Positions 7,102 through 63,667 of a stretch of 64,000 nt of DNA are shown piece after piece. A model generated the notes under the pieces. It saw only the letters and a list, made by a program, of their open reading frames with translations. It did not search any database and had not been told where the DNA came from. Made by a program: the position numbers and the translations under genes. Each line of letters opens with the position of its first letter. Positions within the stretch are counted from its first letter, which is position 1. This DNA comes from Oikopleura dioica (Eukaryota > Animalia > Chordata): contig OU015566.1 in the NCBI GenBank assembly GCA_907165135.1, positions 5,270,001 to 5,334,000 on the forward strand, written 5' to 3'.

Positions 7102-9047
7102 ATGAAGCTCCTACAGATTCTCGCCCTCGGAGTCTCCTCCATGGAGCTCCCACGGGTCAGCAGCCTGAACAAGAGATCAACCGAAGACGGTAAGAAAACA
7201 TCCCCCAAAACGAGATGACTTTGAGTAATGATTTCAGTGCTCAAACATTTGCCCCGCATGATACGAGATACTCGTGATTATGATGACGAAGACGACGATC
7301 CAGCTTTTGAACTTCGCGGCGAATCGCCAATGATGACAGAGGAACAAATTCAGGCTTCTGAAGAATTGTACAACTCCTACATCGCTGATCCCAACATCCA
7401 GAACACTCCATTCAAGGTGAGTCATTGAAACTGGAATCTCTCGTTTTTCAAAAAATATTACTAAAAACTAACAGAGGAAACTCCCGTTGATTCTCCCTTA
7501 AAAATCTTTATCTAGCCAATGGACTCGTTCGTCTCAGAAATTTTCGACAACAAGCGAGACGATCCCGTCGCCCTTCCAGAAGAAATCGGCCTCCGAGCTG
7601 ATCGATCCTCTCAGGAATTCAAGCGATTCCTCGACCGAAACCCCTCTGGTCTCGCCAAGATCAGCCTTCCACCAAACCTTCTCTCTGATCTCTACGATCC
7701 AGTCTACGAAGAAGGACCTCTGCTCTGCAAAAAGGTGAGAAACGCGATTCCAATCATTTTTGACGATTCTTTCAGTCGAGATCCGCTTCCGAGCGCGGAA
7801 TCGGCGCCGGTGAACAGCCAATCCACATCAAACCAATCGGCTGCTGCCCAAATCACGAAGATGGAAAGCCATTCGGCCCCGGAAAAGCCTGTTGCTGCGG
7901 ACACGTCTACAATACCACCAGCCACTTCTGCTGCGACGAGTCCGCCGGCCAGTGCACCGACGGCAGCTGGCACATTTACGAAAACACGGAACAGAACAAG
8001 CGAAAGTGCTGGAAGTCGCAGACCTGCGTCACCGAGCCCACCACCAACATCGTCGAGCTCAGCTGCACCAACAGCGTCTACCACGGCTCCACTTGCGACT
8101 TCACCTGCCCCACTGGTGAGTTTTTCTTTGTTTGACAGGCGCGCGCCGCCGTGTTTGGATTTTCGCAGTTATTAGCTTCACGCCCTTGAATTTGATTTGC
8201 AACACCTCGGCCCTTCCTCTCTGACTAGACTTTTTTTCTAATCATTCTTCTAGGATTCGATCTTGCCGGTATCGACCAGGCCTCTTGCGATCCGAAGACT
8301 GGCGACTGGACCAACATTTTCGGCCAAACAGTCGAAGAAACTCCCTGCTGCAAGCGAAAGTGCGACACCAAAGATCCCAACTACAAGCTCGACTTCTTCA
8401 TTATTCTCGATCAGTCCTCTTCGATCGGCGACGAGAATTTCCAGAAAATGAAGAATTTCGTTATCAACCTGTTGATGCAGTCGAATCTCGGCCAGCATGG
8501 TGTCCGAGTTGGCTTGATCACTTACAACCGACGGCCAACTCTTCGATTCCACATGAACGAAATGGAAAACCACCAACAAGCCATCAACGCTGTCGATTCG
8601 ATCGTTTACGAAGGTGAGTAGACTTCCCAAACTGACTTATTTTTGAAACACTTTCACAAGGACGAGGAACGAACACCGGCGCCGCCATCAAGTGGGTTGT
8701 CGAGAACGCCTTCCGCCCCGAGTTTGGTGATCGACCAGAAGTCCCCAACAAGGTTACCCTACTTTCCTCCGATTTCCCCTTCAACCTGCTTCTAGGTTCT
8801 CCTTATTACCGACGGTCGAGCCCGAGATCCACCAGTGCTCAAGGTCCAGTCCGGCCGCCTCCAGGAGCAGTCGACCGTCTACGCCCTCGGCATCGGCAAG
8901 CAGATCGACTACGTCGAACTCAACCGAATCGCCTCAGATCCCTCCGAGCGACACGTCCTCTACGTCGACAACTTCAGCTTCCTCGAGCGAGCCTTCCAAA
9001 AGCCCACTTTGTCTAGCATTTTCTGCGACGAAGTCTGCCTCAAATAA
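7102..9047 (+). CDS. Secreted Cys-rich + Sushi/CCP + von Willebrand factor A protein
   Basis: Signal-like MKLLQILALGVSS. GT-AG introns link an acidic segment, CCPNHEDGKPFGPGKACCCGHVYNTTSHFCC (galaxin-like di-Cys motif), a Sushi domain CVTEPTT...GSTCDFTCPTGFDLAGIDQASCDPKTGDW, and a VWA domain DFFIILDQSSSIG...GRGTNTGAAI...LLITDG...YALGIG. Stop TAA at 9045-9047. Confidence 0.85.
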
Positions 9048-23600: not shown

Positions 23601-26600
23601 ACCTCCTCGGGCGTGTTGTAAAACGAGAAACGGTTGTTTCGCGTTTCCTGCTCCGAAATTCGCGTCTTTTCGCCATCTTCCGAAATGCGGAAAAGCTCAA
23701 GAGAATAGCGCGTGTTTACCATGTCCATTTGAGGCACTAGCTTCTGGGTAACAATGTCGAACTCCCAAATCGTCTAAAAGAACCCGACTTGCACGTGGCT
23801 TTCCGGACGAACGGGAAATCGAAAAAACGCCAAACATGCAAAACATAAAAATAAACCCCTATTTCTTCTTCAAGGATAATGATAACAGAAATAAAGATGT
23901 GTAGGCGAATATGTCATCTCAAAAATATTCGAACGTGAAGCGCTAACACAGGGATGGAAATATAACAAAATTTTCCGGCGGCACCGGCACGGCACCGCAC
24001 AACTAAAATACCCGTGCCGCGGCACGGTACGGCACGGCACGGCACGAAATTCGAAAATGGGGTGCCGCGGCACCACGGCACGGCACGGCACAAATTTGAA
24101 TCATATTATATGATTCATATAACTTATGAATGAAAATGAAAAAAATTAAGTGAACTTATCAAATTTTGAAAAAATTAAATGAAAACCATAATAAAGTTAA
24201 TGTCTTGGATAATTTGAATTTTTCAACAATGGGTGAGGGTGGGGTTGAAGACAACACTGAGATTGATAGCAATGTTTCCAGCCAATGTCAAGCCCCTTAA
24301 ATTAACAAATCAAGGAACGGGGCTGAAACGGCCCGAAGGGCCGTCAAGCCCTTAAATTAACAAATCAAGAAACGGGGCTGAATCGGCCCGAAGGGCCGTC
24401 AAGCCCTTAAATTAACAAATCAAGGAACGGGGCTAAAACGGCCCGAAGGGCCGTCAAGCTCTTAAATTAGCAAATCAAGGAACGGGGCTAAAACGGCCCG
24501 AAGGCCCCCTTTAATTAACAAATCAAGGAACGGTCAATTATACTGTGCCGCGGTGCCGTTACCAGATTTTACTCTCCGGCACGGCACGGTACGGCACGTG
24601 CCGTGCCGTGCCATGCCGCTGTGCCGTGCCGTGCCGTGCCGCTCAGATTTCTATCCCTGCGCTAACATAGCTTTAGGAACATGTAAACATTAACAAACAA
24701 ATATGTCACTCGGCCCATTCCACTGCTGAAGGTCGCATTTTTTGGCATTCAACAGCGGGATGAGCGGCTTATTTGGAATTTACGGCTTTTTGGGCGACTT
24801 TGAATATTGACTTCAAAAATATTCGAGCGAATATTCGATTTAAAAAAAGAGAAAAATTGACATAAATAAAGAACGATTTTGAAAATTTTCGGGTAGAAAA
24901 TTTGGACATGCATGAGTTACCCAAACTGGATCCCACTGGAGATCAATCTTGGTCGCGTACGCGTTGATATCGATACTTTCGCAGTCGACCGATGCCGGCG
25001 GCGTCCAAAACGGTTGTTCGTCGCTGCGCCCAAAGTTCTTCTCGCCATTGGGACGGAGAATGTAAGGCGTCGCCGTGATTTTGTACTGCCCGTTGAAATC
25101 AAGATTGACGACTTGGTACAAATTGTCGCCGAGGTCGATTACTCTTCCTTGATCGCCGAATGTAAGCCGACTGAGGACTTGGATGTCTACTCCGTCAATT
25201 CCTTTTCAAAGGATAAATAAATAGAAAATTCCTTCTCGCAATGGAGACCCACTACGCGTGCAGTAAGCATTATGTAATTAAGTCGATTAGCGCAAGCAAT
25301 TGATAATATAAAAAGAAAGATCCTTAAATTGTTTTATGGTTATTTTCTATCCGGATTCCTTCAGAGGCAGTGACCCTAGCCGTAATGGTATTTTCTTCGA
25401 TCTTCGTCAGCATAACTCTCGCTGTTATATCCGTCGTTTGAATTATGAATTCAGTTGGCTTCTCCGTTTTCTGGTTACCAGCAAACGAATCAACACGGAT
25501 TTTGTAGGTTGAGGATGAAGAAATGCCATCTTCCGCGTTGAATTTGATCAAGTATCTTCCTTGTTCGTCGATATTTTCTGGATCGGTTGTTTCAACTTTT
25601 TGACGATCGCTTTTTGCCCTCGGCTTTCTGGTTGTCGGATCGCTTCGACCATGAAAAAGTCAACATGGCCATCGATTGGAAAAGCAGCGGTGAAGCTAGT
25701 ACTGCCTTCCAAGACTTCAATGTCATCGGTCTCGACCGAAGGCGGGCTCAAGCTTACGAAGTTGTTGAAGTACCTCCACTCGGAATAAACCATCTCCCGG
25801 GACACCTTGTGCTTGGATCGCACCTTGCAGTGATATTCGAAACCAAGAGGCAGATCGTCAAATGTGGAGCTGTCGCCCTTTTCTTCGCGGAAATAAATCT
25901 CCACGATCTCCTTAGTCGAGGTCCTCACTTGTTCCAAAACCACTTCAGTTGCGGCTTTTTTCGTCCGCGACTTGGCGAATTCGGCTGTCAAAGTGGCCTT
26001 CTTCCCCGTTGGCGTCATTTTTTCACTGACGCGCAGTTGCTTCGGAATCGGAGGATAAGGCTTGTTCGTGGCGTCTGGCAAGTTCTCGCCGATTTCGATG
26101 TCGAATGAATCTGGTTCCACGTCGGTGTAAACAGCACTGCGCGGGATGCAGCCCGCATGGTAGTTTGCGACTTTTGTGATTGTGTCCAAGTCCCGGTAGT
26201 TTTCCAACAAGAATACGTTGTCTTTCTTAGGCATAGAAGCGATCGCATAGAGCTCAGCATTCTCGACGGAGCGGGAAATACCAACGGCAGTGAGCGTTAT
26301 TCTCTCCCCGAAAGCATCCTTAATATCGTTTGCCATGTTGTTGACATCAGCCACGTCGGATTCCTTCCCATCGGTAATCAAATAAAGATAGATTTCAGAA
26401 TTCGGTCGTAAGCCGCTTTCCGGGATTAAAACTTTCGACATGGCATTCTGCAGCGCTCGGGCGATTCGAGTTCCTTTTCCAGAGTAGACCATTTTGTTGA
26501 TGGCAGTGATCATGTCGTACGCGTTCTGATGCTCGTTCAGGTCGAAGATTGTTCGGAAAATATTGTTGTACAAGTAGACCGACACTTGCGTTCTGCCTGG

Positions 26601-29600: not shown

Positions 29601-32600
29601 TCGGAGGATTCGAAAGTAACCACGTATTGGCTCTGTCCGTCCTTGAACGGGACAATTCGCTGGTTGATCTCTTCCCTGATTGCTTCATCTTTGTCATCAT
29701 AAAGCTTGACCACAAAGTTCTCAGCACTTCCTTCCTCTGGCGGGTAGAAGGTAAAGCGGACTTTGTTCATGTACTGCTGCGATTGCTCAACAGAGAACAC
29801 TTCTTCCGGCTCAGTGATGAAAATCGTTGGATCGGAGGGTTCCGATGTCTTCCATTCGTTCGTCGACTGCATAATGATTTTGTAGGCTGTTCCCGGCTCG
29901 AGGATATCGTCCACTTTGAAGGCTGGTTTTCCGTCTTCAGTCATCATCAGATCTTCCGCCGGAACATCCGATATTTCGAAGACTTCTTCACCGTCCATAT
30001 CTTGTATTTTCAAGCTGTAGCTTCTCACGGCATCTGACGGCTTCCAGGTGATCGTCGCTTCTTTGTTGCTCACTGTTGAGATTCCAACTCCTTGGGGAAC
30101 AGGCGCTTCCAAACTTCTCGTCTCGAATTTGAACTTCTTCAAATCGGACTCCATGGGGCCTTTGACACTCGTCACTTCGGCGACATAAGTGGTCGCCGGT
30201 TCGAGATCAATGTCATTCGACTGATCAAAGACGAGCGTAAAGTCATTCGCCACCACCTCTTCAAGCGGAAATTCAACAACGTTGATGACCTCAAAATCGT
30301 CCAGAAATGGACTCGTGTTTTTTTCTTGAGGACGACTCTCAGCAAATCCGCTTGGTTCTGCACAAGATCGCTCACTTTCAACGCCGCGCTCATTTCCGTT
30401 GATTCGTAATCCAGCATAATCGGCGCTGTAGGCTTTGTGAAGATTCGAGAAGGAAGGACATTTCGCGATCGAACGACTTGTTCTTGGTCGACGTTTTTGA
30501 TCGCGGTCAGAGAAATATCATAACTAGAACCAGCCTCCAGATCAGATAGAGTAAAGCTTGGGTCTTCGTTATTAATCGGGAATGTCTCAGTCTGTCCAAA
30601 ATCGTTTCTCTTTGTCAGCAAAAAGCTGTCAACTCCGACCAAGGGTTCCCAAATAATCTCCGCTTCGCCTTCGTTTTCGGAAAGAACTCGAACCCAGCGA
30701 GGACTGATGATTTCATTCTCGCAGCCTCCGTATAGCATGTCGACTTTGATCCGTCCGAATGCTTTGACGATTTCTTGGGATATTTCTTCCGACTCTGTGT
30801 CGATTTCGATGATGTTTTTCGGATCGACGACGCTGGAAAAGTCGTAATTGTTGTTGAAGCTGACAACGGCGATATCCGCGGATTCCTTCAAATCAGCAAT
30901 GTTCAGGACCATTTCTGCCTCGTCAGAGACAAATCCAGAGGAAAGAATAATGATCTTCGCTCGTTTGGAAATTTCGCGAGTGTCGATTCCAGTGTAGTCT
31001 TTTCCAACCGGGAAGCCTTTTCCATCGAACTTCATGATGAGCTCTTGGAAGCCTGCTGATTGGATGTTCTCGGCGATTCGGACGATTGTTCTGAGACCTT
31101 GGCCGAGATTTTGACTGTCAGAGGGGATGATTGTCACTTTTGACTGCAGAACTTTCTGGATGACCTTGGGCAGTTGCTGCAAGTCGAGATCGTAAGCAAT
31201 CGAAGAGGTGGAAGCAAAGAGCACGAGTCCAACTCGGACGCCAGACGTAGCAATGTTCATTTGCTCCACAAAGTCGACAATCGCCTTCTTTACTTGGTCA
31301 AGTTGCGCTTCCATTTTTATCGAAACGTCGATAAGGAAGATTACGTCCTGTTGCGAAAACAGAGGGCAGGCGTCCCGCGGGCACAGATTTTCAGCAATGC
31401 TCTTTTCTAACTGCTTGGTTTGCTTTTCGATGTCGTTGAAGTTCTTCAAATAGACGATGTCCTCGGGCGTGTGGACGATCGAACTGATTTCGGATCGGTC
31501 CACGCCGTTGCCGATCGCAACGACTTTGACGCTGTGCGCGATCTTTTTCAGCCTTGAGGCGGGTTCCTCGACTGGATCAGCTGATTTTCCATCCGCGAAA
31601 ATGATCACGTGAAGCGGGTGATTCGGTCGGCGACCGTTGGGCGCGTAATTCATCGTCCGAATGATTTCGTTTATCGCGCTGCCGAGTGCTGTACCCTTGC
31701 CCAAGGACTTGAGTTCAAGGTCGAGCAGCGACTTCAGAAGTGTTTTCTTATCTTCGAAATCGTCCAAATTGAACACGACGCGGTACTTGGCGGCGAAAAC
31801 GGCCAGCCCGAATTGTGTGTCTTCGGGGGAGACGGTGTAGTGCTTGATGAACTCGCGGATGAAGGTGATCACCTTGATCAGGTCTTCTTCTGAAACAGTT
31901 CTCGACATGTCCACGAGGAAGAAAACATCAGCCTGGGTTAGATGACACATTAAATCGTCAGTTGATGGCTGTCGCGGAGCCAAAGGCATTCCAGTTTCCA
32001 GTTGCTCGCAAAGTCGGCCTTCTCGGAGGCCATTTCCCCGGCCAATGTCTTTGTAACCAGCATCACAGGCGCAGGTAAACGTTGTTGATTTTCGAATACA
32101 TCTTGCGTTTTCGGAGCAGTCGTTTCCATCGCATGGGTCGCAAGGGATAATCCGGGTCATGCTGTCATCTGGCGAGCGATAGGGCTCGAAGTTTCCGTAC
32201 ACCTGACCGGCCACAGTGGCAAGATTGACCTGAATGGAGGTTTACTCTCGCTTTTTGAGAAAATAAATTCAAACCTGATAATTTCCATCGACGTAAACGT
32301 GAATTTTGCATCTGAAGACGACTTGATCGTTGAACTCGTAAAACTCGGCGAGTTTCACTTCCACTGTTGCAACAACTGCGTCCTCTCCATCGATGAAATG
32401 AACGTTTGGAACAAGCCCGACAAGGAGATCGTTCCAGATCATGTATTGCACAGAAGCTGGGTCGTTAAAATCGTCAGTCCATTCGAGTTCGCCATTTTCA
32501 GGGTCGAAGACAAATAGCTCCGCTTCGATGCAGCCAGCCGCTAGAAAATTATGTCAGCTTGATAAAAAAAAAGGTCAGGAAGCCCTTAAGCAAGTCGTTT

Positions 32601-35600
32601 TTATAATTTTTAATTATCAAAAAGATACCCTTAAAGAATCTCTTTATAAATAATAAGACGATGGAAAACGAGAGCGTCACGATTTTCTTTCTGGGGTTAT
32701 ATTAAAGGCAAAAAAGAGATTTGAGATAAACTCCCTTAAATTTGATCTGAACAAAGCGAGTCAATTTCAATTAGGCTTTGATTATTTTCTCAGCGTCGCT
32801 CGTGAAACTTTGCGGTCGGAAATATTCACTGCGTATTTCGGCAAAGTCGGAAATATACACCTACTGGAGCATAAAATTGAAGCAAGAGTATTTGATAACG
32901 TTAGGCCGAAGCGGATTGTATTCACCACTCGCTCCTTGGAAACGCGCCAAAAACAGGAAAAGAAATCGCCTTTCTGAGAGAGGCGATTTTCTGGCAGTTA
33001 GATTTTCTGGCAGTTAGACTTTCTGGCAAAGGCGATTTTCTGGCACTGCCAGAAAATCTAACTTCCAGAAAATCGCCTTTGCCAGAAAGTCTAACTGCCA
33101 GAAAGTCTAACTGCCAGAAAATCGCCTCTTTTGATTTTGAATCTACAGTTAATGATCCTGGAAGGTAAAAACGGAGAGGGTTTTCGACAGTACCACCAAT
33201 TTTTCTTACATGTTTTTTTAAATTCATTGACAAAAGCCACTTTTGACCCATTTATTCAAGATTATTGGCTGTAGCAAACATAAATCAGCTTCTTCCGGGA
33301 ATTTTGTGTTAATCACCAGGTGTTATTTGCATCTGATTTCGAGTACTTGGTCACAGTGGGCACCCACTGAGATAATGGCGCACGCTAATGCTTTTAAAAC
33401 TGAACTTGTTATAAAGCTCTCCAGAAAATTCTTCCTCAGGTGGTGAAATCGCCTTTATAGGATGGATATTATTTGAAATTCTGCAAGAAACTCTTAATAA
33501 TAATCATTTTATAAATTCGAAAAACTGGTGATTATCACACAAATTTCATTTCGGAGCAGTTTCAGCAGGAGTTTGCACCTTTCGACGGGAGCGTTTGATC
33601 TAAAAGCCGACTATTCAGGGCGGTAAAAGACTACGAATTGGGAATTGAAATTTCTGCGCTAAAAATAGAATGAGGGTAGCATCCGCAGTTCGTTCTAGCT
33701 GTTTTCGGAGTGACAAACGGGTTCACAGGCAGCTGAAAAGTTAGATTTTGATTTTTTGAGAAAATGGAGAATGATAAGGAAGAAAAATCGTATAGATAAA
33801 TATTGAAAATGACAGCGATTCCACCACCTTCTGAGGAAGAATTTTCAGGAGAGTTTTATAACAAGTTCAGTTTTAAAAAGCATGAGCGTGCGCCATTATC
33901 TCAGTGGGTGCCCACTGTGACCAAGTACTCGAAATCAGATGCAAATAACACCGGGTGAAAATTCCCGGAAGAAGCTGATTTATGTTTGCTACAGCCAATT
34001 ATCTTGAATAAATGGGTCAAAAATGGCTTTTGTCAATGAATTTTTATAAAACATGTAAGAAAAAAATTGGTGGTACTGTCGAAAACCCTCTCCGTTTTTT
34101 TACCTTCCAGGATCACTAACTGTAGATTCAAAATCAAAAGAGGCGATTTTCTGGAAATTAGATTTTCTGGCATATTAGATTTTCTGGCAGTGCCAGAAAA
34201 TCGCCTTTGCCAGAAAGTCTAACTGCCAGAAAGTCTAACTGCCAGAAAATCGCCTCTCTCCGCCTTTCTTACTTTTGATATTGAAGTTTAAAATTGAAAA
34301 TCGGCTTCGCCAGCCACTTTGCTAAGCCGGATTGCAGAAAGATAAACGAAACTTTCACACTTGCGAGAATCGCGCGCTAAGAAAACAAGAATTTGTGTCT
34401 TGGCGAAAAAAAACTCGCTGTAGATTTATTTTTAGGGCTCGTTTCAAAAATAGCTGTCAAATGTTTTTGAAAACGACTCGAAATGGAGCTGATCTAATAT
34501 TTACGTTTTCAGAAAATGATTTGAAATAAAAACAATTTTTTCTGAAATCTAATTGGCCAAACAGCCGTCAGCGCGAATCTGATTGGTCGAAAATTTGGTG
34601 AAAATCGGCGCAATATTTTGTTGATTCAAGCCAACGCGGAAAAAGCGGCAGCGGCTCAATTATTACAAAAACTGCCAAAAACTGCGCTCGCCCGCGAACA
34701 GCATGCTCGAACACGTGTTTCTGTCACAACTTCCGGCTTATCATTTTTCAAAATAAAAAAAGGGTTTTTTACCTTTACTTTTTTGAATTTCACTTTGGCT
34801 CGATAAGGTGGAGGTTTTGTTATCTCTTTTTGGACTTGAACACTTTGGCCGTTTTGTGTCGAAACAGAACTGGGCCCGGAAAATCGGGAGGAGAAAAAGA
34901 AAAGGGGCAAAGAATTTCATATTTTTGGCATTGCTCTTTTTCTGACTCTCTTTGGTTTAGAAAAAGGATCGAAAGTGGGCCTAATTCAGGATCATTAGAG
35001 GAGTAATTGGGTGATTCATGTAACGGCTCGGGTGGAAACGGCTATGGTGGTGGTGTTTTGGCTTGGTGCAGTTCTCCGTGGCCGGTGACTGATCCTCAGA
35101 AATCCCCCTTGATCCGCGCCCGGAGGCGTGGGGCCGATTGTTTTCCGTCTTCTTCCACTTATTTCCGGTGAAAATCTCCTCTTTCTCGCGATTCTCTTTG
35201 TTTCTTCGGATATTCTGTTGTATAGCAACAGGTAAAAGATCAAGTCATTACGCAAAAGTCCGGTTTTCGATCGGAAATAGTAATAAAAATCCGTGGAATG
35301 TGAAAATTGAGGTGTATGGAGCTGAATACCTCAGCTGAGTGGCCCGCGAGCTTTCGAGTGCAGGGGCGCGCGCTGATACTAGAACGCTCAGGGGGCGCTA
35401 TACGAGCAAAACGCCGCGATGAAGAAAATCCGAGAGAGCAAATCCGAAATTGCGCCTCACTTCCGGGATCTGTTTAAAACCCTATCACACCGACCCACTT
35501 GAGAAAAAGAAGGGAAAAGAAAAGGCAAAACAAAAAACTGAAGAGAAAAAATAAAAACAAGAGAAACTCACTTTATCGAAGAAAAAAAAAATTTGTCTCC

Positions 35601-38228
35601 GTGAAAACGAATTACTAACAGATAACAAATTATCGAGTCAATAAGCCACTTAGAGGATCTAAATATTTTTTATCGCCGTTTAAAAAAAATAATGATAAGC
35701 GTGTATAACAAGATGTTTTCCGTACAGTTGCCCAAGGACTTATTTTTTGCCCAACAATAAAAATGTGATTGTCAATATTTTTGACCAAAACAAAGCTTTT
35801 TTGGAATAAAGCAGGGAAAATCAGTGGGTTTTACTTTGCCCCATCTTCGAATTTGTAGTAATTTCGCCCTAATTAACCCTTCGTAAGTCACAGAACCCAG
35901 CAAATTATGTTTGAAGCCGACTTAGACCAAAAATTAAACAATTTAGGAAAAAACGAAATTTCGAATTGGCTTACCGATTTTGTCATCAGCTGCCGGCAAC
36001 TCGTTTGGCAAAATTCTCGTGGTCGTAATCTTCCTTGCCGCCAGGGTTCGGTAATTTGAGCTCACGCTAAAACTCAAGGAAACAAAGCTTGAGACTCACG
36101 TTTTTTAATTTGAGTTTTGAGAACTCAGAGATGAGAGCTCGCGTGAGAAATCAATTCTGGCGATCCATGAGCCAATCAAGGAAGCGCTCGCTTAATTTGA
36201 GTTTTGAAAACTCAAAACTCTCATATCTCCCAAAAACTCAAAACTCCCAAAACTCTCAAATCTTCTCAAAATGATTTCTCAAGTCACTTTGAGTTCTCAA
36301 TTTGAGGAAATTTGAGCGTCTAGCCAAAATGAGTTTTAGCTTGAGCTCAAATTACCGAACCCTGCTTGCCGCCGTCCAGTTGCCCTCGGTCGATTTCGAT
36401 AGCGCTTTGATGCGGTATTCATAGTCGGCCTCGGAGTTGAGCCCTTGAATCACTGCCGAGATCTGGCCAGACGGCTCGCTCGAACTTGCAGAGACGATCT
36501 TGTACTTTGGCAGACATTCGTCCTCCTTGGCCACTGGGCTCTGGCAAATTTCTGGCGTGATTAGCTTCGACTCAACGATGTAGTTTTCGATAAAGCCCAT
36601 TGGCTTAGCTGGCGGGAGGAACTTGACTTCAAAGCTAGTTCCCAGTACTTCTGTAACGACAGCGGCTTGGGGAGGGGAAGCAATGCCCGGGAGAGTCTGA
36701 GCGCGGCAGAAAATTTTTCGCCAATAAGAGCACCCTGTTTGGTTTCGAGTTTGACGCCGATATTGTAGTTTGTATCGGGTTGAAGACCGTCGATGATGAA
36801 CGCGTTGTAGGAATGATCCAAAACGATGTATTCGAAATCCGGCTTTCTCAGGCTCGTTTCTGCCATGAGATCTTCGTACTCCATGCTGCCTCCAGTGATC
36901 GAGCCACGGTCCATGCCGATTAGTTTGAATCGCTCGTCAGCTTGTTCTGTTTCCGTTTCGTAAGGAAACCAACTGATGATGAACTTGTCGATCACTTCCG
37001 GGTCAAACTGCCATCTTTTCGTAATCGACCAATAGACGTCGACTGAATTGGCGCTAGAAGGCGTGCAAGAGGCTGTGTCCTCGTTGTTTTCATCGAGCTT
37101 CAGGAAGCCGACGAGCGGCTCACAAGCGCTGGTGTTTTCGACATTTATCCAATCGCGGCCGCATTCGCACTCGTAACCGCCCGGAGAGTTGCGACACTGC
37201 GCAGTCGGATGGCAGGGCGCGGGCGAACGCTGGCACTCGTTGATGTCTCGGCAGATTGGAGGCACTTCTGAGAAAATTCCGCCTGACATGCAAATCAGAT
37301 CCCGAGAGCCCATCATTTCATATCCCTCCTCGCATTCGTATCGGAGAGTTTCTCCTTCCGCCAACGCTTGTTCGCCCGAATCGACAAAGTCGACCAAGGA
37401 ATTCGGGATGATAAAAGAGCCGTGGGGGATTTTAGGCAAGTCGTAGCAAATCGGCTCACGAGACTCGTCTGAGTCAGGTTCGCAGATGAAGCCGTTTCCA
37501 GAGTGACCAGGGGGACAATCATCGCACATGTGACCACTCAGCGGCGCTGCTTGATCGATGCAACGAACGCCAGGAAAGCAGGATGGGTTCGGGTTTTCGC
37601 AGCCGTCTTTGTCCTCCGTGCAAAACTCGCCACCCCAAGCGTCGCCGCAGATGCAACTGGCCATGTAAAAACTGTCAAAGTTCGCCTTCGTATCATAATT
37701 ACACAGTCCCCCGTTGCGACAGGCACAGTAATTCCAAGTAGGAGTAAACTCAGTGGTATGCTCTCCGTCGTCGAGGATGAAGACGACGCGGTTGAGATCG
37801 CTGAGCATTTCCAACGGCTGCGAATGCGCCGCGGAGTAGTGAAACTTGCCTGTTCTCGTCACTGTACCGGCTTTTACTTCTGGAGGAATGGAGACAGTTA
37901 CGGATTCTGGCGTTTCATCCGTCCAGTCGAGCTGGATCTCGAATTTTTCACCGAACATAACGTTTACGGCCAGAGGTCCTTTAAAAATCGGCGGCTGGTT
38001 TCCAGTTGGAGAGACATTCGACGAAATAGGTGGAGCACCAAGGCCGGGAATCGGTGGAGCTCCTGCTGGAAGGCCTCCTTGCTTTTTGAGGCCGAGGAGT
38101 TTGTTTTCATTTTCCAGGTAGGTTTTGACGCATTCCGCAGAGGCGAGGCATTTGTAGGACTCCCTTTCTTCTTTGGAAGGGATTTTTATTGCCCCGAGAA
38201 AAGGGAGCAGGGCTATCACCCAGATCAT
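11674..38228 (-). CDS. Giant single-pass mosaic adhesion/mucin-like protein (about 4,700 aa, estimated from exon lengths): signal peptide, MUC4/VWDE-type EGF cluster, Sushi, Ca-EGF, FN3, SEA, EGF, VWA x2, FN3 array, VWA, FN3 array, degenerate VWA, Thr/Pro-rich stalk, SEA-like repeats, EGF, TM, short tail
   Basis: About 20 exons join with consistent splice phases: 38228-36356, 36033-35975, 32540-32275, 32229-29503, two small exons at about 28360-28170, about 28126-25359, 25201-24921, 23773-about 23321, about 23250-23079, 19388-18201, about 17960-17883, about 17787-16658, about 16517-16202, two small exons at about 15600-14990, about 14804-12940, about 12596-12144, about 12103-11902, about 11857-11674. 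Four single-base frameshifts in short homopolymers must be assumed. TM ILIFLIILIVVLFIVILVLSYFV; tail KRTKTGIYHPSRQENRRNNS*. Confidence 0.8.
23949..24659. mobile_element. Non-autonomous hAT-type MITE (711 bp) in intron 23774-24920
   Basis: Perfect 8-bp TSD CGCTAACA (23941-23948, 24660-24667); TIR CAGGGATGGAAAT / CAGGGATAGAAAT; subterminal GGCAC pentamer arrays inverted at the two ends. Confidence 0.92.
24287..24533. repeat. 55-bp minisatellite (4 copies + partial) inside the hAT MITE
   Basis: Unit gtcaagcccttaaattaacaaatcaaggaacggggctgaaacggcccgaagggcc repeated head-to-tail with few substitutions; units end in the hairpin GGCCC-GAA-GGGCC. Confidence 0.92.
32976..34260. mobile_element. Foldback/Mutator-like non-autonomous element (1,285 bp) in intron 32541-35974
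   Basis: Perfect 9-bp TSD CGCCTTTCT (32967-32975, 34261-34269); termini GAGAGAGGCGATTTTCTGGCAGTTAGA on both ends; inverted arms of about 450-480 bp (32976-about 33452 vs about 33815-34260) with modular TTCTGGCAGTTAGA subrepeats; non-coding loop of about 360 bp. Confidence 0.93.
36042..36364. mobile_element. Non-autonomous hAT-type MITE (323 bp) inserted within a coding exon of the giant gene
   Basis: Perfect 8-bp TSD CTTGCCGC (36034-36041, 36365-36372); 34-bp TIR CAGGGTTCGGTAATTTGAGCTCA(C/A)GCTAAAACTC with 1 mismatch; interior rich in TTTGAG/CTCAAA motifs. Removing the element plus one TSD restores the reading ...EGNWTAARKITTTRILPNELPAADDKI followed by a GTAAGC donor. Confidence 0.95.
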
Positions 38229-39089
38229 TTTAGTTTCCCATTCAAAGTCTGAAAAGAAATTTTTTAATCAAAAAGAATTAAAAATTAGGAAAAAGACTTC
38301 TTTTTGCTCACAAATTTTGACAGTAAGATAGCAGAGAAGAAGTTTTGAATTCTATCAAATCTAATTATTCATAAAGAAACCTTACTTTTAAGGTCTCGTG
38401 CAGAACCGGTAGAAAAGATAAATTTTTGAATTTCATTTAACTATGTTAAAAATATTCTAGTAAGCATTTTCGATAAGGTCAAGTGTTGGTCACTTGTGGA
38501 ACCACTTTGTGGTGTTCAACAAGGCGTGAACTTTTGCGTCAGCGATTAATTCAATAAACAACTTCTTTTTCTAGCGGCGGCGCAGTTGCTTTTCTCTGAC
38601 AACAACAACCGCGAGCATTTGTTTCGTCACTCTCTGAGGATCATTAGGTGAAAGTAATTTCGTGAAATTGGTAAAAAAGAAACGTCAAAACGGGCAACTT
38701 GCTCGGAACTAGGGCAGCTTGGCCGCGGGCGGAGCCAGTCATACGCAAGAATTTATGAATCCCTCGCTGAACACCTCCTCCACCAACATAATCAGCGGCT
38801 CGCTCGGCAGGGCGCCAAAACACGCCATGACGCGTAGATTCTTTTAGAGCCTCTCGTGAGAATGAATAAGAGATAAAATGCCAAACATCGCTTAACTTTT
38901 ATTGAAATGAAAATTTTCCGAACAATCTCAATCAGGGTTAGAGTCTTGTATTTTCGAAAGAAAAACGTAGGAAAAAATATAGATGCTTGATTTATGAGTT
39001 TCGACTTTTTTTGTTCTATTCAAATTGAAAATGAAAATTTATCGGCCATTGCCAGAATAAAATAAACATAAGCATATAACAATAAAAAC

Positions 39090-39514
39090 GGGGGGTACTG
39101 AATTGTGCCGCCCTGCGCCGCCCTGCGCCGCCCGGTCCGGAACCAATCGACTATCAATCGGTCAAACCATGACCTAGGAAAGAGTTCTGAACAAGAGCGA
39201 GAGTTGGGCCCCGCCAACCCAATGAGTTCTCTACCAGAATATGCACGCGTAAGGGCCTTTGGCCCGTCGCGTGCTCAATAAATTAGTGATTTTATGCAAG
39301 ATCTGAATTTGATTGAGAAATTCGTTACTGGCACCCTAAATTAAAGGTTTTACTTATTTTAACATTTTGACTATATAAATAAGTGAGAATAACTAAGTTG
39401 ACATAAAAAGCTTAAATTGTGGCCTTTGAAAGACCAAATATCTTCAAACCCGATGAGGCTGGGCGGCACAGGGCGGCGCAAGGTGGCGCAGGGCGGCACA
39501 ATTCAGTGTCTCCC
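39090..39514. mobile_element. Non-autonomous DNA transposon (425 bp), GG-terminal, 8-bp TSD (Merlin-like by these criteria)
   Basis: TSD ATAAAAAC (39082-39089, 39515-39522); TIR GGGGGGTACTGAATTGTGCCGCCCTGCGCC vs GGGAGACACTGAATTGTGCCGCCCTGCGCC; subterminal GCCGCCCTGC repeats. Confidence 0.85.
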
Positions 39515-39748: not shown

Positions 39749-41707
39749 TCAAACAGAAGTTACGGGACTGGTGTCTCTCCAGAAGCGAGTCAACACGGTG
39801 CTGAGAAGCAAGACAATCAGCGCCAAAATGTAAAAATACGCCATTACTCGGTCGAATACAGTCGCAGCGTATCTCCACTCTTCTTCGTACGCCGCGCCAA
39901 GGTCTCCATCCATAGTGGCTTTGTTAATGCAAGCGAGCTCTAGAATTCATTCGATGAAAAAAATTCAAACAAATCGTTCACCTTTTAGAATCTCCATCAA
40001 AAGACGTTCAGTGGGGGTTTTTACTTCGTCGACGAATTTGTTGATTTCTTCAGCTTTGGCAGTTTCTTCTTCATGGCTCTTTTCTTGTGGACGATCAGGT
40101 GGAGGGCCCAAGGTAAAAAGAATTTTTGGCAAGGAATCGATAAAAACGCATCTTATCTTGTAACGGACTTTTATACTTATTTTCGGGACGATTGATAGCT
40201 ATATAAGACAGATTGAAATAGATTCATCCGTTGCCCATTTTGCCATTCTCTTCGCTTCCTCTCCAGAAGTATGATGAAGTCGCAAGCAGAAAACGGTCGA
40301 AATAAGAGAACAAACAACAAGAACAAGAGAAGCGACGAAAAACTGACCGATCAGAGGTGTCTTGGACGGCATCGGTGGAATTTGCTGAGTCAACTGGTCC
40401 ATAAAAACGACCAAAGCAAGCATAATCGTAATATCTGAAAAATGTTTTGTGAAGCTCTTGGTTGAGCTTGGTTACTTAGGCCAATTTTTTCGCCAGCATC
40501 GGGGGGCAGGAAGAAGCCGAGAATGATCAGGATTACCGTCAAAATGCAGGGAACGACGATGGAAAGGGTGGGCAAGAGAGTGTACCGCTCGAAAACTATT
40601 TCGTAGATGATTTCTTTTGGATGGTTTTTGAAAGTCTTATTTGCATACCTAAATGATTAAAAAAAGCCAAGTTATCGCTTTTGACTTTATTTTTAAATAG
40701 TACGAACCATGCCTGGGAACTCGTCTTCGCAACAAGGATATTTCAGTTCCCTCATAATTCCATTCGTACTGAGAATATTCCATTCCGTTGAATTCGGTTT
40801 CATTGGGCCTGAATTATTTTAGAGAAGGAATTATGCGGACTCATCAGAAAATAAATGATTGCATTACTCACTAACAAGCATTTGTCCTGTCTGACCAGGA
40901 CCAGTTATATTATTCGTCGGAGTTTTGATTCGAAACGAAATATCTCTGCTTGAATACGTCCAGGGCCCGAAGGTCAAAGGACAAGCCTGAGTATCGTACG
41001 GAAAAAAGGTCATGTCGAAAACGCAGCCAGCCTCGAAATTAACTATCGTTACCCAGTGGCATGTTCCATCGTAGGCGACTGTCACTCCTGCTTGGTACTT
41101 TTTGTCGAAGTCGTCGGATAGATTGTCGATCAAAACTACATCCGGCGTCCAAATTTTATCCGGGGCGATGATCACGTGTTTGATGCCGTTGTTCAGACTT
41201 GGTCTCCAATGTAGAAAGTCGTCTCGCCAAGTAAAGTCCATTCTAAGAAAATTAATGAGCGTATAAATCCCTTTCAAAAAGTCTCATTTACATAGCAGTG
41301 AAGTACACTCGTTGCTCCCTCGCGTTGATTCCATGAAATTGCTCTAGAGTGACGTCCATTTCCATGGGCATCGGTGAATCCGTAAACGCAGTCGGAATTC
41401 TGCTCGGGTTCGCTGCTTCTGATTCATCTCTAATGTATTTGACGCACTCGTCTGGCACAAGTTCTGAATCCCAAGGATGCTCCTCGAATGCTTCAACTGC
41501 TTCATTATAATCCATGGTGCAACCTGTTTGATTCATGTCGAGAACATAGCTCCAGCCTTTCAGCAGACGATCGTAGAGGATCCCTGTGTTGAAGCGCCCA
41601 AAAACTTAATAAAAATTTATGGTGCTTGATTTCTTTCAAGATTCAGATTCTTTAAAATAGGTTCTCTTCAATTTACCAAGGCCAATAAAGGCAAAGAAAA
41701 TCCGCAT
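39749..41707 (-). CDS. Divergent nicotinic acetylcholine receptor alpha-like subunit (Cys-loop ligand-gated ion channel)
   Basis: Signal MRIFFAFIGL; IWTPD; Cys-loop CVFDMTFFPYDTQAC; FGPWTY; loop C KYPCCEDEF (vicinal Cys); M1 IVVPCILTVILIILGFFLPPDAGEKIGL; M2-M3; MX motif KW|IRCVFIDSLPKIL; M4 EEWRYAATVFDRVMAYFYILALIVLL. Two GC-AG introns (40614-40712, 40157-40234); stop TGA at 39749-39751. Confidence 0.93.
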
Positions 41708-60800: not shown

Positions 60801-63667
60801 TTCTTGCTCGATTCAAAGTGGGGCGCATTGTCGTTGACGTCCAAAACAGTGATCATTACTGTAGCCTTTGCGTAGAGGGACGGTGTTCCATGATCGCGAG
60901 CTTCAATTTCCAGTTCATAACAGGGCGTGGTTTCGCGATCCAGCGGCTTGCCCAGACGAATCGTCCCGTCGTACGTATCAATCAGGAAGTAGCCGAGTTC
61001 ATTTGGATCCACACGCGACAACTAGAGGATTTTTTTAATAAACAAATTTGACATTTTCAACAATATCAGTGTGGCTGCAAACACGGGCGCCTCGCGATTA
61101 CTGTATCTGCTGCTGATTACCTGATAGGAAATGGCGCCGTTGCGACCTTCGTCCGCGTCTTGTGCAATGACAGTAGTGATGATAGAATTGACATGTGCGT
61201 CTTCCGGAATTGTGACTTTGATTTCGCGCTTTTCGAAGACCGGAGGGTTGTCGTTGACGTCCATGACGTTGATCTCAACCTTGGCGCGGTCGGTTTTTTG
61301 AGGAATTCCATGATCTCTTGCAATGATCTGAAGTAAAAGATGAGGATTAAGCTCAGGATCAACAACTTACCTCGAAGCTGTAGTATTTAGTCTGTTCGTT
61401 ATCGAGATTTTCAAGCAGCGAAATCACACCACTCTCCTCATCCAATTTAAACAGCTTCTCGATTTCTTCCTGCGCGATTCCTTGGCCAATTGTATAACTA
61501 ACACGGGCGTTGTCGCCGGAATCAGAATCCGTTGCAGCGATTTTGCCGATTATCTGCCCTGGCGCTTTATCCTTGAGACAACAAAATTGAGAAACTATTA
61601 GCGGATTATGAAGATTACCTCTGAGACGTTGATAATATAAACATCTTTGTCAAACACAGGTGCGTAGGAGTTTTTGTCCTGCACATGAATGTTCAGAATA
61701 GCTCTCGCTCGGTGCCCGACAAGATCGGTAGCAATGAGGGTAAGGGCGTAGGTCTTATGGTCCGAATAATCCAGGTTTGTTCCTAGAATGACATTTCCGC
61801 CACCAAGCCCATCTGATTGAACGAAAAAGACGCCGTTGTCGGATCGCTCATCGATTTCCAGCTCGATCTGGTCGGCCAAGTCCAAATCGACGAGAACATC
61901 GTTTTTCGAAATTTTGAAAACAACGCTTCCGGGACGCGAGTCTTCCGCTACCTTGACGCTGAAACTGCTCTGGCTGAATTTCGGAGGACTGTCGTTCACA
62001 TCGATCAGGTTGACTCGAAGGTCGACAATGTCGGATAAGCCGCCGCCGTCGGTAGCTTTGACTTGGAATTCGTAGTGGTCGATGGTCTCGCGATCGAGCT
62101 TCTTGACCAAAGTTATTCGGCCGGTATTACTGTCGATTGCAAAAGGGAGAAGTTTGGGAGAAATCAACTCGTAGGAAAGCTTCCCATTTGGGCTGTTAGG
62201 ATCGTCCTTGTCCGAGGCAATGGCGAATGTAACTGTGTGGCCGATTCTAGCGTCTTCTTTGACCCGGGCGACGAGAGGATTAATGTTGAAGTGCGGCGCG
62301 TTGTCATTGAGATCGACGATAATGACCGACACGGTCACGATTGACTCTTGCCTCCGTCGACCATGATCTTGAGCACGAACACGGAGCTCAAACTTCCGGT
62401 TTAGTTCGAAGTCCAAATCGCGGATCAAGTTAATATCACCGGAAGTGGCATCAACGGCGAAGGTATCCTTGTCATTCATCAACGCGTAGGTAACTCGGCC
62501 ATTTTCCCCTTCATCGGCATCTGTTGCCTTGACTGAAATGACTTTGGTCCCGATTTTCGTTCCTTCGGAAAGACGAACTTCCAACTCGTCTTTTGCAAAA
62601 ACAGGTGGCGAGTCGTTGTCGTCGAGGATCGTTACTTCCACGCTTGTCTTTAAAACAAATGGTTAGGTTTGTGAGAGCCACTTGATTAGGGTTATTTACA
62701 CTGCCATGAAATTATTATTTGCTGTAAATTGGAAAAGCACTTGACTAGAGCTGCGTTTATCGAGGTCCTTAAAGGACGCGCCAAAAGTTCAATTTTGCTG
62801 GAATTTGGAATTCCATTTGTTTCAATAAAGACAATGCTAGTCAAAGAAGCTTTGAGACACCAACGCAGGTGAAAATTCCCAAACAATGGTGATCAACCAG
62901 TAGCTGGGCAACATGGCGTGTGCCCAAACACACCCGTGAACTTGTTTGTTGTTTGACGATTCTAGTTGTATTTTTACCTGGCTCTGATGAATTGGACTTT
63001 GACTGTCCTTGGCGATAACGTAGAACTTATAGAAGGCGATTTTTTCGCGATCGAGTTTTTCGTGGGTCATTATTCGCCCGTATTTGTCGATTGTAAACGC
63101 AGTTGGGGATTTTCGCGATTTCTTCTCGACAAGAGAGAGCCTCAAATTGCCCTGATCCATCAGATCCTTGTCCGTGACATCGACAGAGCCGACGATTGTC
63201 CGCGTGGGAGTGGATTCGTGAACCGAGAATTTGTACTCGCTCTGGCCGAAAACCGGCTCGTTGTCGTTGACGTCGTTGACGTGGATAAGCAACCAGCAGA
63301 AACTGGCTTCGTTGGTCTTTGTGTTGCTCGCTGTGACTTTGAATTTGTATTGCGTTTTCGTCTTTCCTTCGGGATCCTCCAGGTCGATCTCAGCTGCGAC
63401 TGTAACGACGCCAGATTTGTCCATGACAAAGACGGGATTGCGCTGCTCCTCGACAGAAGCCCTCCAAGCCTGCATCGAGTAGTTGACATTTGAGTCGGTC
63501 TCGCTGAAAGCCTGGATGTGCGCGACGACGGATCCGATTTTCGAGTTCTCATCGACCTTTTCTTCGACGATGTTATTTGGGTAGTTGAAGACAGGCCTGA
63601 GCGCGTAGGAATATTCCGCGAGGAATAAATAAGGGAGGAGTCCTCCGAGCCATGATATAGCTTTCAA
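54864..63667 (-). CDS. CELSR: Cadherin EGF LAG seven-pass G-type receptor (CELSR/flamingo/starry night orthologue)
   Basis: Signal peptide, 9 cadherin repeats (DxNDNxP linkers, DRE/DFE motifs, ITFNN in EC9), EGFs, two laminin-G domains, EGF-laminin, hormone-receptor motif, GAIN/GPS CVFW...WSPHGC...CSCAHLSTFAILM, 7TM, cytoplasmic exons ending ...SILKNTPSSSQATTTS* (TAG 54864-54866). Canonical GT-AG introns with consistent phases. Confidence 0.96.

What the first reader, a model, noticed from the sequence alone, without database searches (positions are those of the whole stretch)
36034..36372. hAT MITE inserted in a coding exon that can be spliced out in frame: an intron in the making (introner-like)
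Seen: a 323-bp element with 34-bp TIRs and a perfect 8-bp TSD splits an FN3-end exon of the giant gene. Read unspliced it gives a stop (…AASRVR*). On the coding (-) strand the TIR contains CG|GTAATT (GT at 36355-36354), and the downstream TSD copy ends in CAAG|G (AG at 36035-36034), preceded by an AG-free stretch of about 25 nt. Splicing 36355-36034 leaves exactly 9 extra nt (…TAASRVRKITTTR vs ancestral …TAARKITTTR). A second route (G|GTTCGG to GAAG|ATT) is also in frame. Established: introner elements create introns by supplying one splice site from the TIR and co-opting the other from the TSD, and Oikopleura shows massive intron gain. Inference: this is a fresh, probably polymorphic, transposon-to-intron conversion by a CAGGG-terminal hAT family.
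Basis: partly seen in the sequence, partly recalled or inferred. Interest (0 to 1): 0.9.

Follow-up and report, generated by a model that had tools for sequence, protein, structure and literature searches.

The report
Young transposon insertion splitting an Oikopleura exon
A 323-bp miniature transposon has recently landed inside a protein-coding exon of the tunicate Oikopleura dioica, and its end carries a good splice donor, so it could be removed in frame as a new intron, but no RNA evidence was reachable and the known idea remains untested here.

Summary
A 323-bp element (36042-36364) has 35-nt terminal inverted repeats (34/35) and a perfect 8-bp target-site duplication. It interrupts the end of an FN3 domain in the first coding exon of a large secreted-protein gene on the minus strand.

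The window is Oikopleura dioica Okinawa (GCA_907165135.1, OU015566.1:5,270,001-5,334,000). Three metagenome contigs from a related lineage (92% aa identity, dS about 0.8-1.8) carry the exon uninterrupted (…NWTAPRKITTTR…). The insertion is therefore derived and young.

- The donor in the repeat (tcg|GTAATT, 36355) looks as strong as the exon's own donor.
- The proposed acceptor in the duplication (GGCGGCAAG|G, 36034) is poor.
- A better in-frame acceptor lies inside the element (TTTTAG|, 36067), adding 42 nt.
- A competing acceptor 36 nt downstream of the donor would give stops.

Two things were missed. A 1-nt deficit in an A-run (36714-36718) already breaks the frame upstream, so the public annotation ends a 555-aa protein at 36561 and leaves the interrupted exon part in no CDS. 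The transcript would also fold into a strong hairpin that buries the donor.

Transposon-derived introns are already reported for Oikopleura. This is a testable candidate, not a demonstrated nascent intron.

The parts
36042..36364 (-). 323-bp non-autonomous hAT-like MITE; termini CAGGG...CCCTG; internal TTTGAGTTTTGAG-type sub-repeats; no coding capacity
   Evidence: absent from the orthologous contigs L002-L004
36330..36364 (-). terminal inverted repeat at the 5' end on the coding strand (CAGGGTTCGGTAATTTGAGCTCAAGC...)
   Evidence: pair I1: 35 nt, 97% complementary
36042..36076 (-). terminal inverted repeat at the 3' end on the coding strand
   Evidence: pair I1
36365..36372 (-). upstream copy of the 8-bp target-site duplication (GCGGCAAG on the coding strand)
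   Evidence: D5; the orthologous single site reads GCGCCGAG
   Evidence: 1 T in the 15 nt before the AG, AAG, 11.6th percentile of all AG sites in the window
36352..36354 (-). in-frame TAA created by the insertion (…AASRVR*)
36354..36355 (-). candidate 5' splice site tcg|GTAATTTG inside the repeat, phase 2; its GTAA contains the stop
   Evidence: PWM score 7.9, 99.4th percentile of all GT sites in the window; the exon's natural donor tcg|GTAAGCCA scores 8.4
36067..36068 (-). alternative in-frame acceptor TTTGTTTCCTTGAGTTTTAG|cg inside the element; with donor 36355 it gives a 289-nt intron and +42 nt (…AASRVRVSSNYRTLAARK…)
   Evidence: 9 T in the 15 nt before the AG, TAG. The position-specific PWM score is mediocre.
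36320..36321 (-). competing acceptor CATTTTGGCTAG|ac 36 nt downstream of the donor; its use would leave 278 nt of element with stops in the mRNA
   Evidence: 96.5th percentile acceptor. A 36-nt intron is shorter than all 13 curated introns (41-63 nt).
35975..36033 (-). remainder of the interrupted exon (RKITTTRILPNELPAADDKI); the natural donor G|GTAAGC follows at 35974-35973
   Evidence: the donor position is conserved in L002-L004
36367..36708 (-). FN3 domain coding sequence immediately upstream of the insertion
   Evidence: PF00041, 33 bits, cut-off 25
36714..36718 (-). A5 run where the window lacks 1 nt relative to three orthologous contigs (GEKIFCRAQ there, GEKFSAA… here); breaks the frame 350 nt upstream of the element
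36561..38228 (-). publicly annotated 555-aa CDS (signal peptide, EGF_CA, Sushi, FN3) that ends at the stop caused by the frame break

Best explanation
Shown: this is a young insertion of a 323-bp non-autonomous hAT-type MITE into the linker just after an FN3 domain. The domain sits in the first coding exon of a large, strongly constrained, secreted EGF/Sushi/FN3/VWA protein gene of Oikopleura dioica (Okinawa reference individual).

Inferred: the allele is most likely a recent, possibly heterozygous or polymorphic, disruptive or hypomorphic insertion, not an established intron.
- The unspliced transcript stops after four extra codons.
- The repeat's strong GTAATT donor is probably recognised by U1 as it emerges.
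- No equally good acceptor is placed to give one clean product. The TAG 36 nt downstream gives stops, the T-rich TAG at 36067 gives +42 nt in frame, and the poor AAG in the duplication gives +9 nt in frame.
- I therefore expect a mixture of products, in which in-frame rescue is at best partial.

The upstream 1-nt frame break is most likely a homopolymer error of the Nanopore-based assembly, not biology.
For: - The insertion is real and derived.
- It is young: repeats match 34/35 and the duplication is perfect. The surrounding exon shows dN/dS 0.03-0.08 against orthologues at dS 0.8-1.8.
- The genome uses short canonical GT-AG introns with T-rich YAG acceptors.
- Donor 36355 is at the 99.4th percentile of all GT sites. 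Several alternative acceptors exist with different outcomes.
- The transcript folds at -144.6 kcal/mol (z -7.5), with the donor inside the 35-bp stem.
- The public annotation has no CDS over 36560-34921.
- The sequenced animal had about 3.6% heterozygosity, and the assembly is haplotype-merged, Nanopore-based and Pilon-polished (PMC8008620).
- The frame break is a 1-nt deficit in an A-run. Three further frame switches sit at A-runs in the same gene.
Against: - A gene under such strong purifying selection carrying a disruptive insertion in the reference haplotype is itself a hint that the insertion is tolerated, for example because it is spliced.
- The donor removes the stop codon.
- Six of the nine AG sites in the last 90 nt keep the frame.
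- The insertion lies in an inter-domain linker where 3-14 extra residues could be harmless.
- The Oikopleura spliceosome is described as permissive (PMC4122922).
- My splice-site models rest on only 14 donors and 15 acceptors curated by eye from this window.
Confidence: 0.5

Rival explanations
1. Nascent intron. The MITE is removed from most transcripts in frame, using the donor in the repeat at 36355 and an AG in the duplication (36034, +9 nt) or in the element's 3' part (36067, +42 nt). The allele is then functionally near-neutral and on its way to becoming an intron.
For: - The donor is strong and overlaps the stop.
- There are six ORF-preserving acceptors.
- AAG|GA acceptors appear in 2 of 15 curated introns, at 8660 and 61572.
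- The insertion lies in a linker after FN3.
- The gene is under strong constraint.
- The mechanism of one site from the element and one from the TSD is documented for introners (PMC11282704).
- Transposon-insertion introns are listed for Oikopleura (PMC3443670, Table 1).
Against: - No RNA evidence was reachable.
- The TSD acceptor lacks any U-rich tract.
- A competing acceptor lies at 36320.
- The hairpin sequesters the donor.
- This is a single copy, so no family-level enrichment can be shown.
- The annotation, made with transcript hints, has no model here, although the frame break confounds this.
Confidence: 0.35
2. The gene, or its first exon, is a recently dead pseudogene in the Okinawa lineage. 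The frame break at 36714-36718, the other A-run frame switches and the MITE are all real lesions, so splicing is irrelevant.
For: - The frame break is confirmed against three orthologues.
- Further A-run frame switches sit near 30310, 25590 and 23270.
- The annotation splits the locus into a 555-aa gene and a 4156-aa gene.
Against: - dN/dS is 0.03-0.08 on both sides of the frame break.
- There are no in-frame stops other than the one from the MITE.
- The splice donor and downstream exons are conserved.
- All the lesions are 1-nt changes in A-runs, which is the typical Nanopore error.
Confidence: 0.1
3. Assembly artefact: the element is not really at this site.
For: The assembly is Nanopore-based and haplotype-merged.
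Against: A perfect 8-bp duplication of exactly the orthologous target flanks a complete element with matched repeats. That is the signature of transposition, not of mis-assembly.
Confidence: 0.03

Closest known systems
Introner elements of Micromonas pusilla, Aureococcus and other aquatic eukaryotes (non-autonomous DNA transposons that become introns on insertion)
   Same: Short element with TIRs and a TSD. One splice site can come from the element and the other from the duplicated target (PMC11282704, Fig. 2; PMC12130899). With the +10 donor and a TSD ending in AG, the footprint is always 9 nt.
   Different: Introners are defined by many similar copies that are demonstrably spliced. Here there is one copy, no RNA evidence, a poor TSD acceptor, an 8-bp hAT-type TSD (against 3 bp in Micromonas), and a footprint that changes the protein.
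MITE-derived non-canonical introns of the larvacean Fritillaria borealis (Henriet et al. 2019, as summarised in PMC11282704 and PMC13326754)
   Same: Same animal class. TIR and TSD sit at intron ends. Exonic MITE insertions are neutralised by the spliceosome.
   Different: Those introns are AG/AC, AG/AT and similar, and depend on lineage-specific U2AF paralogues. This window's introns are canonical GT-AG. Precise removal of element plus one TSD would need CA-AG, GC-AA or GC-CG ends, none of which is among the hinted O. dioica types GA/GC/GG-AG, GT-CG and GT-AA (PMC11067885).
Transposon-insertion introns reported for Oikopleura dioica by Denoeud et al. 2010 (cited in PMC3443670 Table 1 and as an introner report in PMC12130899)
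   Same: Same species complex and the same proposed route of intron gain.
   Different: I could not read that paper, so I cannot say whether this family or a still-exonic, unfixed case was described.
Maize Ac/Ds (hAT) insertions in exons that are spliced imperfectly from the transcript via donor sites in the Ds terminus (Wessler and colleagues, 1987; from my own knowledge, not checked here)
   Same: hAT-type element with a CAGGG terminus and an 8-bp TSD. Cryptic donors near the element end give leaky, partly in-frame alleles.
   Different: It is a plant system, with larger elements and experimentally shown splicing.

Membership tests
hAT-superfamily non-autonomous element (MITE) | 8-bp target-site duplication | tested here: met
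   A perfect 8-bp duplication GCGGCAAG flanks the element. A single orthologous site is present in L002-L004.
hAT-superfamily non-autonomous element (MITE) | Short terminal inverted repeats beginning YARNG (Ac: CAGGG…) | tested here: met
   The termini are CAGGGTTCGG… and …CCGAACCCTG, with 35-nt arms. The YARNG rule is from my own knowledge.
hAT-superfamily non-autonomous element (MITE) | Target preference nTnnnnAn | tested here: inconclusive
   GCGGCAAG has A at position 7 but C at position 2, so it matches half of the palindromic consensus. The consensus is from my own knowledge.
hAT-superfamily non-autonomous element (MITE) | Autonomous partner encoding a hAT transposase with matching termini | not testable with these tools
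   No other copy is in the window. Five large unassigned ORFs have no Pfam domain.
Introner / introner-like element | Many similar copies residing as introns in unrelated genes | not testable with these tools
   There is one copy in 64 kb. Collection scans found nothing relevant. The O. dioica genome cannot be searched by DNA here.
Introner / introner-like element | Removed from the mRNA by the spliceosome | not testable with these tools
   No transcript data were reachable. Protein searches for spliced or empty-allele fragments found nothing.
Introner / introner-like element | Carries or co-opts usable splice sites that preserve the reading frame | tested here: inconclusive
   The donor is strong and six in-frame acceptors exist, but the TSD acceptor is poor and an out-of-frame competitor is present.
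Fritillaria-type non-canonical MITE intron | Non-GT/AG termini at the element ends (AG/AC, AG/AT) with YAY context | tested here: not met
   The window's introns are GT-AG. The ends needed for precise removal (CA-AG, GC-AA, GC-CG) are not of that type (sequence).
Fibronectin type III domain (host exon) | Pfam PF00041 match above the gathering score | tested here: met
   33 bits for window 36367-36708 and 43 bits for orthologue P0001 residues 513-618.

The most novel reading that the evidence does not exclude
This MITE family is a working introner of a chordate with canonical splicing. Its repeat places a GTAAT donor 9 nt inside the element, so any insertion whose 8-bp duplication ends in AG (favoured by the hAT preference for A at position 7) is removed with an always-in-frame 9-nt footprint. 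The copy at 36042-36364 would then be a still-segregating intron birth caught in the reference genome of a culturable animal.
Probability: 0.15. Interest if true: 0.75.

Novelty: new member of a known kind. Interest (0 to 1): 0.45.

Why it matters
Intron gain through transposon insertion is accepted in principle, but it is almost always inferred from old, fixed introns.

This case offers a dated, unfixed exonic insertion with a known empty ancestral site. It lies in a gene under strong constraint, in a species with a laboratory culture and existing RNA-seq. One read-mapping experiment could show what the spliceosome does with a fresh MITE, including which acceptor wins and how much in-frame product is made.

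If the element is not spliced, it is simply a disruptive insertion allele. It is then also a warning that the reference assembly carries homopolymer frame breaks that split gene models.

Tried and rejected
- **Related copies of the element.** The exact 19-mer scan of metagenome contigs gave one hit (L001). It diverges right after the 19 bases, has no partner repeat and looks bacterial, so I treat it as chance. Scans of viral and prokaryotic genome contigs gave 0 hits. BLAST of the element against the window and L002-L004 found only self matches.
- **Transcript or allele fragments.** Three word-index protein searches and one exact look-up of the 82-aa ORF found nothing beyond the P0001 cluster.
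- **Automatic intron discovery.** The first heuristic was far too noisy. An EM on ORF junctions converged on junk and mis-called a known intron. I replaced both with 13 introns plus 3 single sites curated by eye. The resulting PWMs are small, so I rely more on T-count, the -3 base and percentiles.
- **Fritillaria-type non-canonical splicing.** I considered it and rejected it, because the window's introns are GT-AG.
- **Rfam scan of 32500-36500.** It returned only sub-threshold miRNA-model hits on palindromic repeats.
- **hAT transposase in the window.** None was found among five large ORFs.
- **Papers not held.** Denoeud 2010 and Henriet 2019 could not be read.
Full report
**What is there.**
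On the minus (coding) strand the sequence reads …ACGGCG GCGGCAAG | CAGGGTTCGGTAATTTGAGCTC … GAGCTCAAATTACCGAACCCTG | GCGGCAAG GAAGATT….
- The repeat finder gives inverted arms 36042-36076 and 36330-36364 (35 nt, 97%). The flanking direct copies are 36034-36041 and 36365-36372.
- The 22-nt terminus occurs only at these two places in the window, with none expected in shuffles.
- The element has no other copy in the window.
- Read through, the exon ends …NWTAASRVR-TAA (36354-36352).

**Where the window comes from.**
- The 555-aa ORF 38228-36561 is an exact match to a protein on record for NCBI assembly GCA_907165135.1, record OU015566.1 (14,533,022 bp). This places the window at 5,270,001-5,334,000.
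- That accession is Oikopleura dioica from Okinawa (PMC11384887). It is the Nanopore plus Illumina plus Hi-C assembly of one male with about 3.6% heterozygosity, haplotype-merged with HaploMerger2 (PMC8008620).
- Introns that can be read off a Cys-loop receptor gene and other genes in the window are 41-63 nt, GT-AG, with T-rich YAG 3' ends.
The non-canonical AG/AC splicing of Fritillaria (PMC13326754) does not apply.

**The ancestral state.**
- A full HMMER search with the first 508 residues found one close relative, P0001 (653 aa, 92% identity). Its 90% cluster also contains P0151 (703 aa).
- Both proteins read …STEGNWTAPRKITTTRILPNEL… straight through the site.
- Their contigs (L002 and L004 from JGI metagenomes, L003 from ENA) align to the window at about 81% nucleotide identity. 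The alignment breaks exactly at the element, with a 4-nt overlap in the subject.
- The single target reads GCGCCGAG where the window has GCGGCAAG twice.
- The exon's natural donor is conserved just downstream: G|GTAAGC in the window, GTATGT or GTAAGT in the contigs.
- Downstream exons are conserved too, at 91-98% aa identity.
- Nei-Gojobori estimates give dS about 0.8-1.8. dN/dS is 0.03 upstream of the frame break and 0.05-0.08 for the FN3 part around the insertion.

The exon was therefore under strong purifying selection for essentially all of the divergence time. The insertion, with repeats matching 34/35 and a perfect duplication, is recent.

**Classification.**
- An 8-bp duplication and CAGGG termini fit a hAT-type non-autonomous element.
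- The target matches half of the nTnnnnAn preference. That rule is from my own knowledge.
- No autonomous partner could be sought.
- A second, unrelated hAT-like MITE lies in an intron of the same gene: 23949-24659, termini CAGGGATGGAAAT and CAGGGATAGAAAT, perfect 8-bp duplication CGCTAACA.

**Host gene.**
- The interrupted exon is the gene's first coding exon. It encodes a signal peptide, EGF_CA, Sushi and two FN3-like domains.
- The insertion sits just after the end of the Pfam FN3 match, which covers model positions 1-79 of 84 in the window piece and 1-82 of 84 in P0001 (residues 513-618). That places it in an inter-domain linker.
- The public annotation has a 555-aa gene (38228-36561) and then a 4156-aa VWA/EGF gene starting at window 34920. 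Nothing is annotated over 36560-34921.

- The 555-aa model ends where it does because the window has GGCGA-AAAATTTTCTGCC. The three orthologous contigs have GGCGAAAAAATCTTCTGCC or GGCGAGAAAATCTTTTGCC.
- One base is missing in the A-run 36714-36718. This turns GEKIFCRAQTLPG into GEKFSAALRLS….
- As assembled, ribosomes starting at 38228 never reach the FN3 frame that the MITE interrupts.
- Three more frame switches in the downstream giant gene also sit at A-runs, near 30310, 25590 and 23270. They leave no room for an intron by my reading.
- Given the sequencing technology and the low dN/dS on both sides, I infer homopolymer errors rather than lesions. This is inference only.

**Can the element be spliced?**
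I curated 13 introns plus one extra donor and two extra acceptors from the window. I then scored every GT and AG site around the element.

| Site | Sequence | Measure | Outcome with donor 36355 |
|---|---|---|---|
| Donor 36355 | tcg\|GTAATTTG | score 7.9, 99.4th percentile of all GT sites | n/a |
| Natural donor 35974 | tcg\|GTAAGCCA | score 8.4 | n/a |
| Real donor at 61618 | GTAATC | curated intron | n/a |
| Acceptor 36030 (second route) | n/a | 0.8th percentile | in frame only with donor 36360 |
| Acceptor 36067 | TTTGTTTCCTTGAGTTTTAG\| | 9 T in 15 (top 2% of AG sites), TAG | 289-nt intron, +42 nt, in frame |
| Acceptor 36320 | CATTTTGGCTAG\| | 96.5th percentile | 36-nt intron, stops |

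- The 15 curated acceptors have 4-9 T in the 15 nt before the AG, and 13 of 15 are YAG. Two of them are …CAAG|GA, so AAG itself is not excluded.
- With donor 36355, six acceptors keep the frame open through to the natural donor: 36088, 36073, 36067, 36061, 36034 and 36016.
- Acceptor 36067 gives the product …AASRVRVSSNYRTLAARKITTTR….
- The small position-specific matrix scores 36067 only at the 58th percentile. I do not lean on that matrix.
- The 36-nt intron implied by acceptor 36320 is shorter than any curated intron.
- A GG-AG join (CAG|GGTTCG to 36034, +3 nt) is also in frame by inspection.
- Precise removal of element plus one duplication would need CA-AG, GC-AA or GC-CG ends. None is among the non-canonical types allowed for O. 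dioica annotation (PMC11067885).
- The transcript of 36385-36020 folds into a long hairpin (-144.6 kcal/mol, z -7.5). The donor lies inside the 35-bp terminal stem. This would hinder U1 unless it binds co-transcriptionally before the 3' repeat is made.

**Weighing.**
Points in favour of rescue by splicing:
- the strength and placement of the donor, which removes the stop;
- the number of in-frame acceptors;
- the linker position;
- the constraint on the gene;
- the reported permissiveness of the Oikopleura spliceosome (PMC4122922).

Points against:
- it is a single copy with no RNA data;
- a TSD ending in AG is expected in about 6% of insertions by chance, or more with the hAT A7 preference;
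- the TSD acceptor is poor;
- competing outcomes exist;
- the hairpin buries the donor;
- there is no annotated model;
- the animal was highly heterozygous, so a null allele could simply be carried.

I put about 0.35 on predominant in-frame splicing. I put about 0.5 on a mainly disruptive or leaky, probably polymorphic allele. The rest goes to a recently dead gene or an artefact.

**Comparison with what is known.**
- The mechanism proposed is that of introners: one splice site from the element and the other from the duplication (PMC11282704, Fig. 2; PMC12130899).
- Transposon insertion as a source of introns is already listed for Oikopleura (PMC3443670, Table 1).
- MITE-derived introns dominate the genome of another larvacean, with non-canonical ends (PMC11282704; PMC13326754).
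- Introners have been validated in another tunicate, Styela clava (PMC12130899).
- The classical analogue is maize Ds being spliced from exons via donors in its terminus. That is from my own knowledge.

If it is spliced, this would be a new member of a known kind. Its value is that it is fresh and directly testable. If it is not spliced, it is an ordinary insertion allele.

**What could not be done.**
No DNA search of the O. dioica genomes and no RNA-seq access was possible with these tools. All routes through the protein collections were exhausted.

Noticed in passing
window 36714-36718 (minus strand): The window lacks 1 nt in an A-run relative to three orthologous contigs. This breaks the first exon's frame. 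It explains why the public 555-aa protein ends at 36561 and why the ancestral gene is annotated as two genes (555 aa and 4156 aa).
   Followed up: yes
window about 30310 (A7), about 25590 (A5), about 23270 (A5), minus strand: There are three more reading-frame switches inside long exons of the giant gene. Each sits at an A homopolymer, and domain sequence continues in the other frame. They look like uncorrected Nanopore homopolymer errors, and gene predictors may paper over them with false mini-introns.
   Followed up: partly
window 23949-24659: A second hAT-like MITE of 711 bp, with termini CAGGGATGGAAAT and CAGGGATAGAAAT (Ac-like), a perfect 8-bp duplication CGCTAACA and internal CGGCA-type tandem repeats. 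It lies in the intron between the exons ending near 24843 and starting near 23773.
   Followed up: partly
window 32970-34260: A 1.3-kb foldback or palindromic repeat with nested arms of 65-93 nt at 95-99% complementarity. It sits in the large first-intron region. Its hairpins give sub-threshold Rfam miRNA-model hits on both strands.
   Followed up: partly
window 35073-35144 versus L002:6580-6651 (also L003 and L004): A block of about 70 nt in intron 1 is about 93% identical at the nucleotide level between lineages whose exons are only about 81% identical, with saturated synonymous sites. It may be a conserved non-coding element or a tightly constrained micro-exon. It has no Rfam match.
   Followed up: partly
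window 39090-39514: Another inverted-repeat element with GC-rich 47-nt arms (GCCGCCCTGCGCC repeats), located upstream of the gene.
   Followed up: no
L002:650-3002 versus window >38900: In the related lineage, a GH9 cellulase gene with a CBM2 domain lies divergently upstream of the orthologue. The window has no GH9 sequence at all and has a Cys-loop receptor gene there instead. This is a synteny break, consistent with the reported genome scrambling between O. dioica lineages. About 350 nt of upstream sequence (window 38475-38820) is still 79% conserved.
   Followed up: partly
window 40649-40708 (minus strand): One intron of the Cys-loop receptor gene cannot be closed in frame with GT-AG at the obvious sites. 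It is either a GG-AG intron (40708-40649) or a GT-AG intron using a distal AAG acceptor (40707-40636).
   Followed up: no
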